Shown here one piece after another: positions 34,972-64,000 of a DNA stretch of 64,000 nucleotides. The notes under the pieces were generated by a model, which saw only the letters and a list, made by a program, of their open reading frames with translations, was not told the origin of the DNA and did no database searches. Numbering within the stretch: position 1 is the stretch's first letter; each line of letters begins with the position of its first letter. Source of the stretch: Podarcis erhardii (lineage: Eukaryota). The stretch is taken from the NCBI GenBank assembly GCA_964252035.1, contig OZ176209.1. One strand, written 5' to 3'. The position numbers and the translations under genes were made by a program.

Positions 34972-35119
34972 NNNNNNNNNNNNNNNNNNNNNNNNNNNNN
35001 NNNNNNNNNNNNNNNNNNNNNNNNNNNNNNNNNNNNNNNNNNNNNNNNNNNNNNNNNNNNNNNNNNNNNNNNNNNNNNNNNNNNNNNNNNNNNNNNNNNN
35101 NNNNNNNNNNNNNNNNNNN
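34972..35119. other. Assembly gap (148 N)
   Basis: Run of N in ZDHHC17 intron 7. Confidence 1.
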
Positions 35120-37037: not shown

Positions 37038-37955
37038 AAGAAAACCTTTTTAGAAAAACAGGCTAAGTCTATGATCTGTATACTCACAAAGCTAGGGCCT
37101 TCATCATAAATAATGCAGCATCTTGGGTGGTCAGAGGGGAGGGTAATGGATGACAGAATGTTGGTAACATTCCAGTTTTTAGGGTTCTCAACCCAAGTAA
37201 GATTTGATTGACAGACGGCTTTAAACAGCCGATCAGATAAGTGGCACACAGCCAAGAAAGGTGTTACTACCTTTGGGAAGTTGGGAGATGGGGCTGATAC
37301 AACCTTAATGACTGCCAGATTTGGCCAACTTCCCTGCTAAATAACAGGCTCTCCTCAGTTTTTGTATTTGGACCTGGTGTGGAGCTACATGGTATGTCTG
37401 CCTCTATGTCAGCAGTGGCAGAGGGGTATGGCGGCAGCACTGGCCATACTGAGTTCTCCCACCACCAAACTCAAACACATCTTCACTGCAGCAGCAGTGA
37501 TGAGTTGCCTCACACCAGAAGCTGGCAGCACAACTACCACTAGGAGCAAGGCCAGTCCTACTACCAGAACCACCAAGAGTTCTCTTATTGTTAAGCAGGA
37601 GGTAAGGCTGTGCCACTGGCTAATACTGGCAAGGTCAGCTTGTAAGGTGTGGAACTTGAGCAGGGTATCCCAGAGGAGATGTCAGATGCAGTGTATATCT
37701 CACCTGTCACCTGGGAGCAGCCAGACTGCCTCAGTGGGGTAGATAGGAAGCACGGATCACTCCCAACAACCAGCTTGATCAATCACCTCCAACCCCTGAA
37801 CTGTGCTGCTTGGTCGTTTTAAGAACAACTGCTTAAGAATTAATGACTGACTTTGATTTCCCTCCCTCTTCGTTCCCCTTTTCCTTGTGCACCATATTTT
37901 TGTAGATTGCAAGCCTTTAGCCTTCTTTTAATTGATTTCATGTATGCCACTCTAA

Positions 37956-38309
37956 GGGACACGGGTGGCGCTGTGGGTTAAACCACAGAGCCTAGGACTT
38001 GCCAATCAGAAGGTCAGTGGTTCGAATCCCCGCGACGGGGTGAGCTCCCGTTGCTCCGTCCCTGCCCCTGCCAACCTAGCAGTTCGAAAGCATGTCAAAG
38101 TGCAAGTAGATAAATAGGTACCGCTCTGGCGGGAAGGTAAATGGCGTTTCTGTGCACTGCTGTGGTTCGCCAGAAGCGGCTTTGTCATGCTGACCACATG
38201 ACCCGGAAGCTGTACACCGGCTCCCTCGGCCAATAAAGCGAGATGAGCGCCGCAACCCCAGAGTCAGTCACGACTGGACCTAATGGTCAGGGGTCCCTTT
38301 ACCTTTTAC
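37956..38309 (+). mobile_element. Sauria SINE, near full length
   Basis: tRNA-derived head GGGACACGGGTGGCGCTGTGGGTTAAACC, B-box GGTTCGAATCC, tail GGGGTCCCTTTACCTTT; TSD TATG(C/T)CACTCTA at 37943-37954 and 38310-38321. Confidence 0.92.
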
Positions 38310-47067: not shown

Positions 47068-48101
47068 TGAATAAGCCACCCAATGCAATAGCTGTGTTTG
47101 GAGCACATCTGTGCCAGCTGTTTATTCAGTCACACAATCCTGCGTGGATAGCACTCTACTTTGGGGTTTTGTTCCAAGAACTCAAAAACATCCTCCTACC
47201 CCAATTTTTTTAACTGCTCAAGAATAAGCTACTTTAAATATACTTAGTCAACTTGTCCTGTTGTCAAAACCACACAGAAGATAAGAATTTTATTTGGGAT
47301 ATTTCTAGTCATTAACAATTTGGACAGCCAAGCACCTGGAAGTTCTATCTTTCTGTAACCAAACCAATCTGTTTTTAAAACTTCTACGTGGTTTATATTG
47401 TCTGTGCTCATGATATATTTTTAAATATTTTGTTTTGAATAGCAGTATACAAATATATTCATACTATCTATAAACAGACTATCTATAACTAAAATCAAGA
47501 GAAGGACATGAGTGAAAGTGTCTTTCTGTCACTGTTGTTCCCCAGCAACTCATAATCTGCCGCATGCTGCCTCCAATCCTGAAGGCAATATATAATCATC
47601 ATTAATATTAGGAATTGACAGCCTTATCCTCCATTCATTCACTTAATCCCCTTTTAAAGCTACCCAAGTTGGTGGCCATTACTGCATCTTTTGGTAATAA
47701 AAGCCTTAGTTTAACTATGCACTGTCAAGATGTACTTCTTTTTGTCTGCCCTGCCTCACCTACCATACAACATCACTGGATGACCCAGATTCTAGCATGA
47801 TGACAGAACAGAAAAAACATCTTCATATTCATTTTCTCCACACCCTGCATAATTTTATTTGCACATATCATGCCTGCCCCTACCCCTTATCTTCCCCCCC
47901 CCCCACTCACACACACACTAAGAAACCTCAAACTTGTAACCTTTCTACATGAGGACATTTCTCCAGCCCCTTGATCATTTTGGCTGCATTGGCTGCATCT
48001 TTTCCAGCTCTTCAATGTCCTCTCTGAGATGCAGTGATTAATAATTATCAACAAATTTCCTCTGACAAAACTGAAGAGAAAAACGCTGAAATCTTCCCCA
48101 C

Positions 48102-48179
48102 CTTGTTGCCCAGTGAAGTGGTGTGGAGTTCAGGTCCCCTCCTAGCTGGTCAACAATAGCACCTTTTGATATGTAGTAC
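48102..48179 (-). CDS. ZDHHC17: ZDHHC17 exon 4 ([26 protein letters not shown])
   Basis: Inside ORF 48038-48268; AG/GTGGGG boundaries; 78 nt. Confidence 0.97.
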
Positions 48180-50260: not shown

Positions 50261-50444
50261 AGTCTTATACCTGCAGAAGTTGGTAGAATGAAGCTTTGGG
50301 GAGTGACACAAAACCATGCAGTATAAAAAGTCATAGCTATTTAAATTACTTTGCTTTAATGCACTCATTTATTCTAATACAGCAGGATTTTATTGATGTA
50401 TGCTTCTAATGATGAATTCATTTTGGTAGCAGAGTACTACTTAC

Positions 50445-50567
50445 TTCACTAAATCTAATCTATTGTTGATTGCAGCCCAGTGAAGAAGTGTAACATTTTC
50501 TTTATCTGGTTGCCGTACATCGTAGCCCGCTTCCACCAACTCTCGACAACGTTCATAAATTCCATAC
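50445..50567 (-). CDS. ZDHHC17: ZDHHC17 exon 3 ([41 protein letters not shown])
   Basis: AG/GTAAGT boundaries, 123 nt. Confidence 0.97.
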
Positions 50568-51611: not shown

Positions 51612-53015
51612 CTTCCACAGTTTAGACAAAATGGTTTTCAGGTTTACTTTTACACATACAAATGCAAAATTGAGGTTTACTTTGCATAACTAAAGGAAAA
51701 GTAACATAAACCTTCAATCTAGTATAAACCATTAATTTTGGGCTTTACTATTAACTAAATGCACAATCTTAGCTTGTTCAGGGACAGCAGAGAAGAAAAT
51801 TAGTGTTCAGATATTAAAACACTATTGCTATTTTTAGGCAAAACATTAGATGGTGCTCACTTCCACATTTCTCTTAAGTATAAAACAGCTTTTACTAATA
51901 TCTTACTGTAAAACACTATCATCACCATTTATATTTGCATGAAATCTTTTTCCAGCTGTTATCCAGTTTAACTTACAACCTGAAACTGGATCTTGGGAAC
52001 AGAAGGAAGATAATTCATCTTCAATTTTATCTCATTTTGCTCTCTAAGTTATCACATTTGTAAGACAAACACCTTTATTCTAGTATTACAGCTATGGGAA
52101 GAACAATGCACACTCTGCATGACCGTGATTCTATTAAGTAAATCTTAACACTAGACTGTGAAGAGGGGGGAAATATAGAAGAGATTAAATACAAATTCCT
52201 CTTCTCTTGGCACTTCCATTATTAAAACTGCTGTTGGTGGCTCTCTGCATAGGTACCTGCTTGAATGAAGAGCTATGATTTAAGTTAAGTATAATCATAT
52301 CTGAGAAATGAGAGAAGGCAGAAAAATAGCTACATCAATCAAGGTGTACTGTTTCCATGGTGTAGTGCAGGGGTCACCAATGCATCACCTACAAGCACCA
52401 GCGTGTCTGCCAATACTTCCTATGTCTGCAAAAGGTCTCAGTAAATGTCCTCTCAAAACTCCACAATGCACAAGTGACTGTTTGCTCTTCCTTTGTTTCC
52501 ACTTGTGCTGGGTTAGTCTCTCCTACACTGAACACAGCCCCTTAAACATGTCCATATTTCAGTGGATACCAGGATTGGACACCCACCCTCCCATCTTCCT
52601 ACTTTCACACTTTAACAGTTGGTAGCAACAGCTGCAGCATTAGGAGAGTAACAGGGCAAAAGCATATATTGTAGTAATGGCTGCTGTCTTTGCAGTGTTA
52701 AGTAGCTGGCAGGAAGAGGGTAGTAGGGCTGGCGAACAGAGGACTGGTGAAATGTAACTGGGTAAAAATATACTCTGTGACACTTTTATTCTAATTATTT
52801 TAACACTCACATTATTGGATTCTTAAACTGAAGCTACAGACAAACAAGACTGAAGTGCATTTGCATAGGCTTTATTTCCTCCACAGACTTTTCAAGAAGT
52901 ACCAGTCCAAAACTGCTGATCCGTTCCGTTCCTCAAAATCTTTATGCAGACATTTTCAGAGGATTGTTTTCCACATGGTGCAAAAATAGACAAGCTGTCA
53001 AATAAACCCACTTAC

Positions 53016-53119
53016 TGTGTAGCTTTGACGATATCCCATGTGCTATAATCATCAATGTGACTTTTGCGCCCAAGAGATTCACTGTATCCATGGGTATAAT
53101 GTGCTTGGGGCTTGATTTC
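53016..53119 (-). CDS. ZDHHC17: ZDHHC17 exon 2 (EIKPQAHYTHGYSESLGRKSHIDDYSTWDIVKAT)
   Basis: AG/GTAAGT boundaries, 104 nt. Exons 2-17 sum to 1806 nt in one frame; exon 1 was not found in the window. Confidence 0.96.
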
Positions 53120-58719: not shown

Positions 58720-59297
58720 TCTCAGGTGAGGCCTAAACCAGGGTCCAGATGCAGAAATGGACTGGATCCTGGCAAGACTATTGGGGGGGGGGTGGATTCC
58801 AATCCAGGAGCTGGGTGATGAAACCAACCTATTTTAGATGGAGTTGCACTCCCTGCAAAGGACTGTATATGCCATTTGAGAGTACACCGTGACTCTTCTT
58901 TGTTCATAGGAGTCCAGGTGGCTATGGTGACTAGGAGTGCCTTCTACTGGATTTGGCTGATATATCAAATGCTCCAAGTCTTGGACCAGGACAGCCTGGC
59001 TTCTGTGACCTATGCACTGGTAAATTCTAGACTGGATTACTATAATGTCCTCAATGCAAAATTCCCTTTGAGGTTGGTTTGGAAGCTGCAGTTGGTGCAG
59101 GATGCTGCAGTGAGGTTACTTGGTGGAGCATCCTACTGTGCACATACTGTACCACTCATTAAGGAGTTGCAGTGACTGTCAATGAACTACTGGGTCAACT
59201 TCAAGGTTTTGGTTTTAACCTACAAAGCTCTGAAAAATACCTGCAGGAGCCCTACTACCCTGCTTAAGCACTGTGCTCAACTGCAGAGGCCTTCTTT
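58720..59297 (+). mobile_element. Degenerate L2 3' region, left part (interrupted by the PPDPF retrocopy; resumes at about 60150-60250)
   Basis: ORFs 58876-59175 (ALVNSRLDYYN...KLQLVQDAAVRLL) and 59182+ (FKVLVLTYKAL). Confidence 0.8.
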
Positions 59298-60149
59298 ATT
59301 TTTTTTAGAAGGCTGCTCAGGATTTATTAGTTTCCATCAGTCAAGTACAAAACAAGAATTAAGTGTTAATAAGGCTTTGTTGGGTGGGGAGAGAGGGGAG
59401 AAGATGCAGCTGCATTGACAAAAAACAAAGTTGTAGAAAAGGATGGTACAGAAGATTTCTCCCCCCACCCCTTTTGTTGCCATTTTTGCTTCTATAAAAA
59501 CCTATGTCTAAGAAGTACTCAAAGCAGTTTGCTCTACTCTACAGGAAGGGGGAGTGGAAAATGGGTTCTGCCTCCTAGTGCTCAAGTCAGAAGCTTCCGG
59601 CCAGGGAGTGTCAGTCTCCTCATGCAGTGGAAACTGTATTCGGTTTGCTGGGCTCACTGGTGTAGCACTTCCACATCACATCCTGAGCCAGGCCACATGT
59701 AATCATGCAGTTTGCCATCTTTAAAGTTCCTGGGTTCTCTAGGGATTCCAACACAGTTGTCATGACTGGGTGGGTCATCTTTCCAAAGAAGCAGCTGGCC
59801 CACCAGTGCCCAGGGTCAGACTTGGGGAGACCTGGATGGTGAGGGATGTCTTCCCCATAATCAGCACTTCCACAGGAGCTGTGGCTAGAAGTGGAACCCA
59901 CACGCCTTTGGCAGCAGTCGTGGCTTGCCACAAGGGAGCCGCTTAGCGGTACTGCTGCCATGTTTCTTTGTTCGTGTGCAAGTTGTAACCCCTTTAAGAC
60001 TTAACGCTGCGCTCAGCAAAATCCTAGCCGTTTCAGACCACAGGTGACCTGGCTCGGGGGTGGGGGCTAGGTGATGGAGCCCATTTGCAAAGGAGATACT
60101 AGGAGTACACTCCACGCACACCCAAAAACATCGAGGCGTGTATGGATTT
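59298..60149 (-). mobile_element. Processed PPDPF mRNA insertion (852 nt: about 188 nt leader, ORF, about 313 nt 3' UTR, A-tail)
   Basis: AATAAA at 59328-59323, A8 tail at 59306-59299, flanking direct repeats CAGAGGCC(T/C)TCTTT at 59284-59297 and 60150-60163. Confidence 0.9.
59620..59961 (-). CDS. PPDPF: Intronless PPDPF-like ORF, 113 aa (retrocopy of pancreatic progenitor cell differentiation and proliferation factor); retrogene or young processed pseudogene
   Basis: MAAVPLSGSLVASHDCCQRRVGSTSSHSSC...IPHHPGLPKSDPGHWWASCFFGK aligns end to end with recalled human PPDPF (MAAIPSSGSLVATHDYYRRRLGSTSSNSSC...IPHPPGLPKADPGHWWASFFFGK). Strong Kozak context aacATGG; no stops or frameshifts. Functional status is unknown. 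Confidence 0.85.
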   Translation of the reverse strand: MAAVPLSGSLVASHDCCQRRVGSTSSHSSCGSADYGEDIPHHPGLPKSDPGHWWASCFFGKMTHPVMTTVLESLENPGTLKMANCMITCGLAQDVMWKCYTSEPSKPNTVSTA

Positions 60150-60284
60150 CAGAGGCCCTCTTTGTTGTGCCACAATCTTGTTTAGTGACAACTAGTATCC
60201 GCCATAGCTGCCCACTTCCTATTGAATTACTTCTTTATGGAGCACCAATAAGCACAAAATGCTAAGGAAATTTCTGTATTTGCA

Positions 60285-60934: not shown

Positions 60935-62602
60935 CCATATTTTTCGCCCTATAGGACGCACTTTTTCTCCTCCAAAAATGAAGGGGAAATGTGTGTGCGT
61001 CCTATGGGGTGGATGTAGGCTTTCGCTGAAGCCTGGAGAGGGGTTCCCACGGAAGGCGCCCACTCCGTCTCCGGCAGGGACGCGTCGCGTGGGGAGCCTC
61101 CGCCTGGGCGGGAGACGAGGCGATGCCGGGGCGTCCGGCCGAGCTCCGCAGTGCCTGCAGCCGCACTTGTTGCTGCTTCTGGAAAGACGAGCTGCTCCTG
61201 ACGCGGGGAGAACCAGGGACATGCAGCCGATACCCCTCTGGCCCTGGCCAGGTGAGCTGGCGGGCAGGTTGGGTGGCCAAGCGGGGTTGGTTGGGGGAGC
61301 AGGCGGGCGCGCAGCGTGGGGCCACCGAGCCACCCAACGGGAGAGCCGAGCGCAGCCCCTGCAGGAGGACAGCGGGGCGCCGCCCATGGAGAGCCCCGCC
61401 GCGCTGGAGGACGCACTCCTCGGCTGCCCACCCACCTCGGGGCTGCCTGGCGTTGTGCGTCCGGCTGGCCCTCTTTCCTTGGAAGCGGTGCAGGCTGCGA
61501 GGGAAGGGGGGATCCCAGATCTCTGCCCGGTACAGCAGGTCTGAGTCCCGGACGCAGCTGAGCTGGGGTGGGTGGCGGGAGGCACCGGGGAAAGAAGCCA
61601 GAGAGGTTCGGGAGGGATCTCCCAACTTATATTCGGAGCGCTGCGGAGGGAGGGGGACTTGCGCGCTTAAGGCGGCAAAGAGCCGCTTGCAAAACAACCG
61701 CTGATCTTTCGGCACTTCGCATTAGCAGAGGGGGTGGCGAGGGGAAGCATCTGCCCAAGGAGCGGCGGGAGGGGAGGCATTGCTTGTTCTTGTTTCGTTA
61801 GCCTTCCGGATTTGCCTGCTTCTGGTGGCGCTTTGGGGCTGATCACCGTGCGCCTGCTTATCACTTGTGGACTTGTTGCTTGGAGACGCCCAGCTCCAGC
61901 TGTGCTAACTTTCTCCGCTGAAGTGCAGTGCGCCTGAGTCAGCTTCGAAGCAGACGAAGAGTTCTGCTTGCCGCCTGTGACTCGCCCGGATGGCTCATTC
62001 ACGGGCAAGTCACTGCAAAAAAACCGGGGATATGCCTTCTTAGCCCCGCCGGAGTACTTTTTAAAAGGCATTGAGCCTTAAAGCTAGAGAGGTAAAGGAA
62101 GCAACACTCCAAGTGAACGACTGCAGACTTCTTTGCCTTTGCAAATGCATCATTTGTCAGACTTCTGAAATGTCAGTTTATGCATCATTGCTTTGGCTAT
62201 GGTGCGGACCCCTCCCAAAGTTTTTATAAATAACACAGAACAATTTAAAGTGCTTGGTTGTCAGGGTGCTGCATCATTTTCAGGGACTGTCTCTTAATTC
62301 TGGACATCACTGCCCCATAAGGAGCACGCTCCCATATTCACAACTGCTAGGCACTGTAGAGACTTCTTAGGATGGAAACCTTATCAGTGCTGGTTGTGTA
62401 TAAACTTTCTGAGCAGTCAATTATTTGTAGCGAAGCTGTGTTTTGTGGTTGCTTTTTTAAAAAGTGGGTTAAACTTAAGACTCTGTAAAAGGAAGGTATT
62501 ACCTGTGGGTTCTGAGATCTTTTTTCTGATTTTTTTTCTCTTTATTTCCCCCCCAAAAAACTAGGTGCGCCCTATGGGCATCCTATAGGGCGAAAAATAC
62601 GG
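60935..62602. mobile_element. 1668-bp TA-flanked TIR element (family B, inverted relative to 26541-27072) carrying CpG-rich cargo
   Basis: TA-CCATATTTTTCGCCCTATAGGACGCAC ... CCTATAGGGCGAAAAATACGG-TA. Both subterminal regions match the 26541 element; the interior does not. No transposase ORF recognised. Confidence 0.85.
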
Positions 62603-63120: not shown

Positions 63121-64000
63121 ATTCCCATTCTTCCTCTGGTATAGCTGCATCAAGTTTGGAAGCTTTTGCTTCTTTTTTTATTTAACCACAGTTTGTTGTA
63201 GTGTACAAACTAACGAACAGTGATTAATGTTAACTCTTTGTCTGAAACAAGCTAACATCCAACACAGTTCATTGGCTCATTTTCATGTTGGCACTCTCAC
63301 TGGCAAAGTTCCCAACTAGTGGGTTGTGCTGATGTTTCTAGAGGTGCTGGGCACATATCTGCTATTTATATGCCATTTTTAAATTTTCTGATTGTGTTTC
63401 ACCCACCTGCTTCCAGGGCTGACTATACACAGACTATGGTGGTAATTACACTAGCACAGTGGTGATCTCCCCAGCTCCCCTCCCCAAATGGAGTATAGGA
63501 TTGCTATGTAAAATACTCCCAAGTACATGGCATTTTCTTAGCCATGTCTTGCTACTATTTTACTTGTTTTTACCATAAATATTTTATTGTATACCTTCAA
63601 TTACATTATTTTCACTGATGAAATCAAATGGAAGGAAAAGGATTATCAAATTTAAGATACGGTCTTAGACAAATCCTAAATAAGTTGACTAAGAAAAATA
63701 CCATCTGCTCAGTAAAAAAACAAGCCCAAACACCCCCCGATATTTGGCACACCTTTTAATGACATAATATTTCATAATTAACCAAAGCATGTCCTTTATT
63801 ATACTATGCAGGAAACAGCTATAAAACTACAAAAATGGCCTTCAATACCATTTCTTGTAGGGCTGCAGCCCTATAAAATTAGATTTTGAGTACTAGAATA
63901 TTGACAAGTTAACGTTTCAAAATAAGATGACTACCAAAGGATTTTCTTGGCACAGGTTATCTCTGCTACTGCTACCACCAGCATCTAAACAGCAAAATAT

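What the first reader, a model, noticed from the sequence alone, without database searches (positions are those of the whole stretch)
59284..60163. Full-length, open-frame PPDPF retrocopy nested in ZDHHC17 intron 1
Seen in sequence: an uninterrupted 113-aa ORF (59961-59620, -) with strong Kozak context, about 188 nt leader, about 313 nt 3' UTR, AATAAA 16 nt before an A8 tail, and a 14-bp direct repeat with one mismatch on each side. Established knowledge: these are hallmarks of LINE-mediated target-primed retroposition, and, from memory, the vertebrate PPDPF CDS is split by introns. Inference: a lineage-specific retrocopy lying in the same orientation as the host, so it could be expressed from ZDHHC17 transcription. 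It could be an unannotated retrogene or a young pseudogene.
Basis: partly seen in the sequence, partly recalled or inferred. Interest (0 to 1): 0.7.

Follow-up and report, generated by a model that had tools for sequence, protein, structure and literature searches.

The report
Old PPDPF processed pseudogene in ZDHHC17
A full-length, intron-free copy of the small gene PPDPF, made from its mRNA, sits in the first intron of ZDHHC17 in a lacertid lizard; its reading frame is still open, but it is shared with other lacertids, changes like non-coding DNA and is broken in Podarcis, so it is an ordinary processed pseudogene.

Summary
Window 59299-60149 (-) is a complete processed copy of a PPDPF mRNA. 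It has a 188-nt leader, an intact 113-codon ORF (Pfam PF15060, E 1e-46), a 313-nt 3' UTR, AATAAA, an A8 tail and a flanking 14-nt duplication with one mismatch.

Compared with the multi-exon PPDPF genes of Elgaria, two Anolis and Sphaerodactylus, it is five exons fused exactly at four GT-AG junctions. Its first base lies 27 nt downstream of the end of the Elgaria TATA box. The host is ZDHHC17, on the same strand. Exons 2-4 are in the window; exon 1 lies just beyond its end.

The interpretation needs correcting:
- **Not species-specific or young.** The same insertion sits at the same site in Zootoca vivipara and Podarcis raffonei, where it is already annotated as PPDPF-like.
- **No constraint on the protein.** dN/dS between the window and Zootoca copies is 0.99 (ML 1.45; 0.5 or lower rejected), against about 0.1 for the true gene. 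Nine residues invariant from frog to lizard are replaced.
- **Decay in relatives.** P. raffonei lost the 3' half, and Zootoca lost AATAAA.

An open frame by chance is plausible (about 0.2 for this lineage). Verdict: an old, neutrally evolving processed pseudogene of low interest. The lacertid parent locus could not be retrieved.

The parts
60150..60163 (-). 5' target-site duplication (AAAGAGGGCCTCTG on the minus strand)
   Evidence: Direct repeat with 59284-59297, 13/14 identical. It ends exactly where homology to parent exon 1 begins.
59992..60149 (-). Retrocopy segment from parent exon 1 (non-coding 5' UTR, 158 nt)
   Evidence: 81% identical to Elgaria L006 3145-3305, which lies 6.7 kb upstream of the ATG exon. 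In Elgaria it is followed by a GT donor (TTAAAG|gtaatg) and preceded by TATATAAA, whose end is 27 nt upstream.
59907..59991 (-). Segment from parent exon 2 (30 nt of UTR plus CDS nt 1-55, ATG at 59961-59959)
   Evidence: Aligns to L003 3965-4055. The parent has an AG acceptor (tctcccag|GG) and a GT donor (ACAGAA|gtaaga).
59832..59906 (-). Segment from parent exon 3 (CDS nt 56-130)
   Evidence: 86-89% identical to L003 7606-7683, L004 7702-7779 and L005 8671-8748, all flanked by AG/GT in the parents.
59735..59831 (-). Segment from parent exon 4 (CDS nt 131-227)
   Evidence: 84-86% identical to L003 9127-9223 and the Anolis equivalents, flanked by AG/GT.
59307..59734 (-). Segment from the parent's last exon (CDS nt 228-342 plus the 313-nt 3' UTR)
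   Evidence: 75% identical over 436 nt to L003 10821-11232. The alignment ends 3 nt before the A-tail.
59620..59961 (-). Open 113-codon PPDPF-family ORF, stop included
   Evidence: It is 73-75% identical to the best PPDPF proteins. dN/dS against the Zootoca orthologue is 0.99.
59323..59328 (-). Polyadenylation signal AATAAA
   Evidence: The T is deleted in the Zootoca orthologue.
59299..59306 (-). Remnant poly(A) tail (A8)
   Evidence: In Zootoca it has degenerated to A6 followed by G-rich sequence.
59284..59297 (-). 3' target-site duplication (AAAGAAGGCCTCTG on the minus strand)
53015..53119 (-). Host ZDHHC17 exon 2 (recognisable coding part; splice sites not mapped)
   Evidence: Translation EIKPQAHYTHGYSESLGRKSHIDDYSTWDIVKATQ. 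Its last 17 residues are 16/17 identical to human ZDHHC17 chains 5W7I/5W7J.
50444..50566 (-). Host ZDHHC17 exon 3 (recognisable coding part)
   Evidence: 40/41 identical to human ZDHHC17/HIP14 ankyrin domain 3EU9 and 5W7I, E 1.5e-28.
48101..48178 (-). Host ZDHHC17 exon 4 (recognisable coding part)
   Evidence: Translation [26 protein letters not shown], found by motif scan. Not searched separately.

Best explanation
This is a processed pseudogene. A mature, full-length PPDPF mRNA, from the transcription start to the poly(A) tail with all four introns removed, was reverse-transcribed and inserted. The mechanism was LINE-type target-primed reverse transcription at a TCTTT|G nick in intron 1 of ZDHHC17, in the sense orientation, leaving a 14-nt target-site duplication. 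The insertion happened in an ancestor of lacertid lizards, before Zootoca, Podarcis and the window's species split. No promoter was copied. Since then the copy has drifted like non-coding DNA. Substitutions fall equally on all codon positions, residues invariant across tetrapods are replaced independently in each lineage, and relatives have lost the poly(A) signal or the 3' half. The 113-codon frame is still open in this species and in Zootoca by chance. Shown here: the anatomy, the intron loss, the shared insertion site and the neutral substitution pattern. Inferred: an L1-like enzyme as the agent, and the absence of function.
For: Structure: ORF, signal, tail and TSD. Intron loss: the copy aligns as five blocks to PPDPF loci of Elgaria (L003/L006), Anolis x2 (L004, L005) and Sphaerodactylus (L007), where the blocks are separated by introns of 1.0 to 6.7 kb with GT-AG ends. 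The fusions are exact to the base. Full length: homology starts at the first base after the TSD, 27 nt downstream of the end of the Elgaria TATATAAA. Shared ancestry: the window is colinear with Zootoca L001 (about 94% identical at aligned bases) and P. raffonei L002 (about 96%). Both carry the insert at the same site with the same 5' TSD, inside a 622/623-aa Ank+DHHC gene on the same strand. Neutrality: 40 differences to the Zootoca copy are spread 13/16/11 over codon positions. NG86 dN/dS is 0.99, and Zootoca vs P. raffonei gives 0.98. Pairwise ML omega is 1.45, with omega = 0.5 rejected (2dlnL 7.7) and 0.3 rejected (17.6). For the true genes, Elgaria vs Anolis gives 0.09-0.135 with omega = 1 rejected. 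Of 63 columns invariant in 14 canonical PPDPFs, 9 are changed in the window copy and 10 in Zootoca's, mostly at different positions. Decay in relatives: P. raffonei has a 660-bp deletion of window 59806-59144, Zootoca has lost AATAAA, and the P. muralis model P0043 runs in a shifted frame. Chance survival of the frame: about 0.5 (no stop from 21 substitutions) x about 0.34 (no indel at the intron rate), or roughly 0.17 for this lineage.
Against: There are no indels in the 342-bp CDS between the window and Zootoca, against 7 in the 490 bp of the copy's own UTRs. P(0) is 0.008 at the UTR rate and 0.116 at the intron-wide rate. Both frames staying open since the split has a joint neutral probability of only about 0.03. 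That could reflect weak selection to keep an ORF. NCBI pipelines annotate the orthologues as protein-coding. No expression data could be examined. The lacertid parent gene itself was not retrieved, so the source sequence is inferred from other squamates.
Confidence: 0.86

Rival explanations
1. It is a functional, fast-evolving lacertid retrogene. The ORF is kept open by selection and expressed from ZDHHC17 transcription or a new promoter. Its sequence is under relaxed or positive selection, and it was secondarily lost in Podarcis.
For: The frame is intact in two lineages that differ at 11.7% of CDS sites. There are no indels in the CDS against 7 in its UTRs. The joint neutral probability of both frames surviving is about 0.03. 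The strong Kozak context is retained. It lies in sense orientation a few kb from host exon 1. The orthologues are annotated as coding. ML omega of 1.45 is compatible with some positive selection.
Against: Omega is indistinguishable from 1, and dS is as high as dN. Replacements hit residues invariant from frog to lizard, and different ones in each lineage. 22 of 36 polarised changes are GC to AT and 11 of 40 differences are at CpG, as expected for mutational decay. The 3' half is deleted in P. raffonei, the frame is broken in the P. muralis model, and the poly(A) signal is lost in Zootoca.
Confidence: 0.09
2. It has a non-coding role. The retrocopy is exonised or used as a regulatory or decoy RNA within ZDHHC17 transcripts, so the ORF is irrelevant.
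For: It is in the same orientation as the host and is transcribed as part of the intron 1 pre-mRNA by default. Its UTRs are somewhat less diverged (7-8%) than its CDS (11.7%).
Against: Its UTR divergence is no lower than that of the surrounding intron (5.7%), so no constraint is visible. The 660-bp deletion in P. raffonei removes most of it. No splice-site or expression evidence is available.
Confidence: 0.04
3. It is a DNA-level duplicate or an assembly artefact (cDNA contamination) rather than a genomic retroposition.
For: None found.
Against: The same insert at the same site appears in three independent assemblies of three species, each with lineage-specific mutations. It also has a TSD, a poly(A) tail and exact intron loss.
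Confidence: 0.01

Closest known systems
L1-mediated processed pseudogenes (retrocopies) of small, highly expressed genes
   Same: Intronless full-length mRNA copy, poly(A) tail after AATAAA, a 14-nt target-site duplication, a T-rich/purine nick site, no parental promoter, and a neutral substitution pattern.
   Different: The frame is still open after about 12% divergence between orthologues. The host is a squamate, where such copies are less catalogued than in mammals. Which LINE family supplied the enzyme was not determined.
Canonical PPDPF (pancreatic progenitor cell differentiation and proliferation factor; Pfam PF15060)
   Same: Same family and length, with a full-length match to the profile. 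UTRs and CDS are alignable to the PPDPF loci of Elgaria, Anolis and Sphaerodactylus.
   Different: No introns and a different genomic location. Omega is about 1 against about 0.1. Nine otherwise invariant residues are replaced (I4V, T13S, Y16C, Y17C, R18Q, N27H, V38D, F57C, P74L).
Annotated 'PPDPF A-like' of Zootoca vivipara (P0003) and 'PPDPF-like' of Podarcis raffonei (P0049)
   Same: Orthologous insertions at the same site in ZDHHC17 intron 1, on the same strand, with the same 5' TSD.
   Different: The Zootoca copy is also open (113 aa) but has lost AATAAA. The P. raffonei copy is truncated to 80 aa by a 660-bp deletion and has a SINE inserted just upstream. The window's copy was not found as an annotated protein in the collection searched.
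Intronic 'nested' retrogenes expressed from the host gene's transcription
   Same: Sense orientation inside a first intron, a few kb from the host's exon 1.
   Different: There is no evidence here of expression, exonisation or coding constraint.

Membership tests
Processed (retroposed) gene copy | All introns of the source gene are absent, with exons fused exactly at the splice junctions | tested here: met
   Four GT-AG introns (one in the 5' UTR, three in the CDS) in Elgaria, Anolis x2 and Sphaerodactylus. The fusions fall at window 59992|59991, 59907|59906, 59832|59831 and 59735|59734. The parent of the window's own family (Lacertidae) could not be retrieved.
Processed (retroposed) gene copy | Poly(A) tail at the position where the source mRNA is polyadenylated | tested here: met
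   AATAAA, then 16 nt, then A8. The alignment to the parents' last exon ends 3 nt before the tail.
Processed (retroposed) gene copy | Target-site duplication directly flanking the insert | tested here: met
   14 nt, 13/14 identical, abutting both ends. The 5' copy is conserved in Zootoca and P. raffonei.
Processed (retroposed) gene copy | An empty site in a species that lacks the insertion | tested here: inconclusive
   The two relatives that could be fetched (Zootoca, P. raffonei) both have the filled site. ZDHHC17 intron 1 of non-lacertids was not obtainable with these tools.
Processed (retroposed) gene copy | A separate intron-containing source locus in the same genome | not testable with these tools
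   The rest of this genome cannot be searched. Earlier notes hold nothing on PPDPF. Lacertid canonical PPDPF was not among the listed cluster members.
PPDPF family (Pfam PF15060) | Full-length match above the curated cut-off | tested here: met
   158 bits against a cut-off of 27, covering profile positions 1-109 of 110.
Functional retrogene | Purifying selection on the protein (dN/dS significantly below 1) | tested here: not met
   Omega is 0.99 (NG86) and 1.45 (ML). Values of 0.5 or lower are rejected. Canonical genes give 0.09-0.135.
Functional retrogene | Intact ORF conserved across the species that carry it | tested here: not met
   Open in the window and in Zootoca. Truncated by deletion in P. 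raffonei. Out of frame in the P. muralis model.
Functional retrogene | Transcription and translation of the copy | not testable with these tools
   No expression data are available.
ZDHHC17 (host gene) | Exon sequences match ZDHHC17 and not other ankyrin-DHHC proteins | tested here: met
   Exon 3 is 40/41 and the end of exon 2 is 16/17 identical to human ZDHHC17 chains. The orthologous gene models carry Ank plus DHHC domains. No ZDHHC13 sequence was available for direct comparison; the assignment of the exon 1 peptide rests partly on memory.

The most novel reading that the evidence does not exclude
This is a lacertid-specific PPDPF retrogene whose open frame has been kept by selection since before the Zootoca/Podarcis split. 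It evolves with omega at or above 1, is expressed through ZDHHC17 intron 1 transcription, and was secondarily lost in Podarcis. On this reading, the lack of any indel in the CDS against seven in its UTRs is the trace of that selection.
Probability: 0.08. Interest if true: 0.4.

Novelty: new member of a known kind. Interest (0 to 1): 0.15.

Why it matters
It matters little beyond annotation. It is a cleanly documented squamate processed pseudogene: full length from the transcription start to the poly(A) tail, four introns lost, TSD intact, and shared across lacertid genera. It is useful as a phylogenetic presence/absence marker for Lacertidae and as a neutral-rate yardstick. It also warns that the 'PPDPF A-like' and 'PPDPF-like' protein-coding models in Zootoca and Podarcis annotations probably describe a pseudogene. 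If the minority reading were true, it would be a modest example of a nested retrogene with an unusually unconstrained sequence.

Tried and rejected
- **Lacertid parent locus.** The canonical squamate PPDPFs sit in one 52-member cluster. Two listings showed the same 15 members and no lacertid.
- **P. muralis copy.** The P. muralis model P0043 has no contig on record, so this copy could only be judged from its protein model.
- **Earlier notes of the scan.** Nothing near the site, and nothing under 'PPDPF' or 'pancreatic progenitor'.
- **Literature.** No paper among those listed connects PPDPF with retrocopies.
- **ZDHHC13 as host.** I considered this because the orthologous gene models are 622/623 aa. 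I rejected it on near-identity of exons 2 and 3 to human ZDHHC17 chains.
- **Positive selection as the cause of the fast CDS.** CDS divergence is 11.7% against 5.7% for the intron. I rejected selection because dS is equally high and the changes are mostly GC to AT or at CpG.
- **Rfam on the SINE-like element.** No match.
- Exons were searched or aligned one at a time by reference. For dN/dS, the parents' exons were laid exon by exon onto the retrocopy's coordinates inside scripts.
- **Restrictions observed.** The N run at 34972-35119 was left untouched.

Full report
**1. The observation**

- An ATG-to-stop ORF of 113 codons runs from 59961 to 59620.
- The start context is aaacATGG.
- AATAAA lies at 59328-59323. 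Sixteen bases further on is an A8 run at 59306-59299.
- A 14-nt direct repeat (AAAGAGGGCCTCTG / AAAGAAGGCCTCTG, one mismatch) lies at 60163-60150 and 59297-59284. It can be extended to 17 nt with two mismatches.
- The ORF matches Pfam PF15060 (PPDFL, 'differentiation and proliferation regulator') end to end, at 158 bits, E 1e-46.
- The word search found 49 proteins, all PF15060 and nearly all named PPDPF by their sources. The best are only 73-75% identical.

**2. It is a spliced mRNA copy, complete from cap site to tail**

I fetched the loci encoding canonical PPDPF of Elgaria (L003/L006), two Anolis species (L004, L005) and the gecko Sphaerodactylus (L007). In all of them the 113/114-aa protein is spread over 6.6-7.6 kb.

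The retrocopy aligns to these loci as separate blocks:

| Window (-) | Elgaria locus | Identity |
|---|---|---|
| 60149-59991 | L006 3145-3306 | 81% |
| about 59993-59906 | ATG exon | 75-79% |
| 59906-59829 | coding exon | 86-89% |
| 59833-59735 | coding exon | 84-86% |
| 59732-59304 | last exon with its 3' UTR | 72-76% |

Reading the parents' sequences at the block ends shows canonical acceptors and donors:
- TTAAAG|gtaatg
- tctcccag|GG
- ACAGAA|gtaaga
- ttgcag|GG
- ATCCAG|gtcagt
- tgtgtag|GT
- GAGAA|gtaagt
- ttgcag|CT

In the window the exon ends are joined base to base at 59992|59991, 59907|59906, 59832|59831 and 59735|59734. Four introns are therefore missing, one in the 5' UTR and three in the CDS.

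Homology to Elgaria exon 1 begins at the very first base after the 5' repeat. In Elgaria that base lies 27 nt downstream of the end of a TATATAAA box. The copy therefore starts at or within a few bases of the source gene's transcription start, without its promoter. At the other end, the alignment to the parents' 3' UTR stops 3 nt before the A-run. 'Full-length' is justified.

On the plus strand the pre-insertion site reads ...CAGAGGCCCTCTTT|GTTG. That is a T-rich/purine nick, followed by T8 and the antisense cDNA. By established knowledge of L1 endonuclease (consensus TTTT|A), this is the geometry of target-primed reverse transcription. Which LINE supplied the enzyme is inferred, not shown.

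**3. Host gene**

The orthologous loci (section 4) place the copy inside a 622/623-aa gene model with ankyrin and DHHC domains, on the same strand.
- Its first coding exon (MAAPLEEYEKEAGCVPILHPE, then a donor) lies at L001 6073 and L002 5230. By colinearity that is about 1.4-1.5 kb beyond the window's end at 64000.
- Inside the window, on the minus strand, a motif scan found three coding pieces: 53119-53015, 50566-50444 and 48178-48101.
- Searched one at a time by reference against PDB sequences, the second is 40/41 identical to the human ZDHHC17/HIP14 ankyrin domain (3EU9, 5W7I; E 1.5e-28). The end of the first is 16/17 identical.

The host is therefore ZDHHC17, the retrocopy lies between exon 1 and exon 2, and the orientation is the host's.

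**4. The insertion is old and shared**

Zootoca vivipara protein P0003 ('PPDPF A-like', 113 aa, single exon) and Podarcis raffonei P0049 ('PPDPF-like', 80 aa) share derived residues with the window's ORF: C16, Q18, NPGTLK and NCMITC.

Their loci, L001 and L002, are colinear with the window from 64000 down to about 48700. Mismatch rates are 5.7% for Zootoca and 3.8% for P. raffonei. The window is therefore from a lacertid lizard closer to Podarcis than to Zootoca; the species was not identified.

The alignment across the insert shows the same insertion point and the same 5' repeat in all three:
- Window: AAAGAGGGCCTCTG.
- Zootoca: AAAAAGGGCCTCTG.
- P. raffonei: AAAGGGGGGCTCTG.

Lineage-specific changes:
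- In Zootoca the 3' repeat and tail have degenerated, and the T of AATAAA is deleted.
- In P. raffonei, window 59806-59144 is deleted. That removes the 3' half of the CDS, the UTR, the tail and the 3' repeat.
- Also in P. raffonei, a 350-bp SINE has inserted about 30-40 bp upstream of the 5' repeat.
- The P. muralis model P0043 runs for a stretch in the +1 frame of this sequence ('MGKTSLTIQ'), so it is disrupted too.

The related lizards that could be examined therefore have no empty site. The retroposition predates the divergence of these genera.

**5. Does the open frame mean function?**

The window and Zootoca CDSs align without gaps and differ at 40 of 342 sites. The differences fall 13/16/11 over codon positions and give 30 amino-acid differences.

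| Comparison | Method | dN/dS | Notes |
|---|---|---|---|
| Window vs Zootoca | Nei-Gojobori | 0.99 | dN 0.128, dS 0.129 |
| Zootoca vs P. raffonei | Nei-Gojobori | 0.98 | |
| Window vs P. raffonei | Nei-Gojobori | not defined | 9 non-synonymous, 0 synonymous changes |
| Elgaria vs Anolis (true genes) | Nei-Gojobori | 0.09-0.11 | two Anolis species: 0 non-synonymous in 7 changes |
| Window vs Zootoca | Pairwise ML codon model | 1.45 | not different from 1 (2dlnL 0.86); 0.5 rejected (7.7), 0.3 rejected (17.6) |
| Elgaria vs Anolis | Pairwise ML codon model | 0.135 | omega = 1 rejected (23.7) |

Of 63 alignment columns invariant in 14 canonical PPDPFs from frogs to lizards, turtles, platypus and ostrich, the window's ORF has changed 9: I4V, T13S, Y16C, Y17C, R18Q, N27H, V38D, F57C and P74L. 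The Zootoca ORF has changed 10, mostly at other positions.

The CDS differs more between the two lizards (11.7%) than its own UTRs (7-8%) or the surrounding intron (5.7%). However, dS is as high as dN, 22 of 36 polarised changes are GC to AT, and 11 of 40 differences lie at CpG. This is the decay of a GC-rich sequence dropped into an AT-rich intron, not adaptive change.

**6. Could the frame have stayed open by chance?**

Simulations from the inferred common ancestor gave the following:
- The probability of no stop and a retained ATG is 0.47-0.51 for the 21 substitutions on the window's branch.
- It is 0.25-0.29 for all 40 substitutions.
- Indel density in the flanking intron is 6.3 per kb between the window and Zootoca, giving P(no indel in 342 bp) = 0.116 for both branches together.

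For the window's lineage alone the chance is roughly 0.17. For both lineages together it is roughly 0.03.

If the copy's own UTRs are used as the yardstick (7 indels in 490 bp, three of them in homopolymer runs), P(0) falls to 0.008. This is the one observation that pulls towards ORF retention, and I record it as a weak, unexplained hint. Against it stand omega near 1, the independent hits on invariant residues, the disruptions in two Podarcis species, and the fact that the copy was selected for attention because its frame is open.

**7. Verdict**

The identification as a full-length PPDPF retrocopy in ZDHHC17 intron 1, in sense orientation, is confirmed by direct comparison with intron-containing PPDPF genes.

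Two corrections are needed:
- The copy is not a recent, species-specific insertion. It is an old lacertid one, already annotated as a PPDPF-like gene in two relatives.
- Its evolution shows no protein-level constraint.

It is best described as an old processed pseudogene that happens still to be open. I put about 0.86 on that, about 0.09 on a fast-evolving functional retrogene, and the rest on a non-coding role or artefact.

**8. Limits**

- The rest of this genome could not be searched, so the existence of its own multi-exon PPDPF is inferred. The basis is phylogenetic bracketing: Gekkota, Anguimorpha and Iguania all have the same four introns.
- No lacertid parent sequence could be retrieved.
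- No non-lacertid ZDHHC17 intron 1 was available for an empty-site test.
- There are no expression data.

Noticed in passing
window 60935-62602: A 1.67-kb GC-rich (about 54%) insertion is bounded by terminal inverted repeats (CCGTATTTTTCGCCCTATAGGATGC...) and a TA duplication. P. raffonei (L002, about 8104) and Zootoca (L001, about 8887) have the empty site GGATATATA|ATAAGG. It is probably a non-autonomous TIR DNA transposon (Tc1/mariner-like, judging by the TA duplication) that entered only in the window's lineage, about 0.8 kb upstream of the retrocopy. Only long ORFs without a tested family were seen; its origin and GC-rich core were not explored.
   Followed up: partly
window 37954-38306; L001 10927-11296, 13820-14035, 15153-15504; L002 9401-9753: This is a tRNA-derived SINE of about 350 bp (B box GGTTCGAATCC) with several copies in the ZDHHC17 intron of all three lizards. 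One copy is specific to P. raffonei and inserted 30-40 bp upstream of the retrocopy's 5' duplication, with a 13-bp duplication of its own. It has no Rfam match.
   Followed up: partly
L002 10150-10156 (= window 59806 joined to 59144): P. raffonei has a 660-bp deletion that removes the 3' half of the retrocopy and 140 bp of flank. Its annotated 80-aa 'PPDPF-like' protein is therefore a truncated pseudogene product.
   Followed up: yes
window 59857-59858 (CDS between codons 35 and 36); L007: The lacertid retrocopies lack the Ser codon present in most canonical PPDPFs (AEY-S-GEV). The multi-exon PPDPF of the gecko Sphaerodactylus lacks the same codon. Whether the lacertid parent also lacks it, or the deletion is recurrent, could not be tested.
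   Followed up: no
window 59620-59961 compared with 59307-59619 and 59962-60149: There are no indels in the CDS between the window and Zootoca, against seven in the copy's UTRs. The CDS has the higher substitution rate. This is weak and unexplained, and could come from homopolymer-prone UTRs.
   Followed up: partly
window 34972-35119: A run of 148 N (assembly gap or masked stretch).
   Followed up: no
one search hit list (P0007, P0009-P0011, P0022-P0025, P0029): Many 'PPDPF-like' proteins of 62-68% identity are annotated in marsupials (Vombatus, Macrotis, Trichosurus, Dromiciops, Phascolarctos). This suggests PPDPF is a frequent source of retrocopies in other lineages as well.
   Followed up: no
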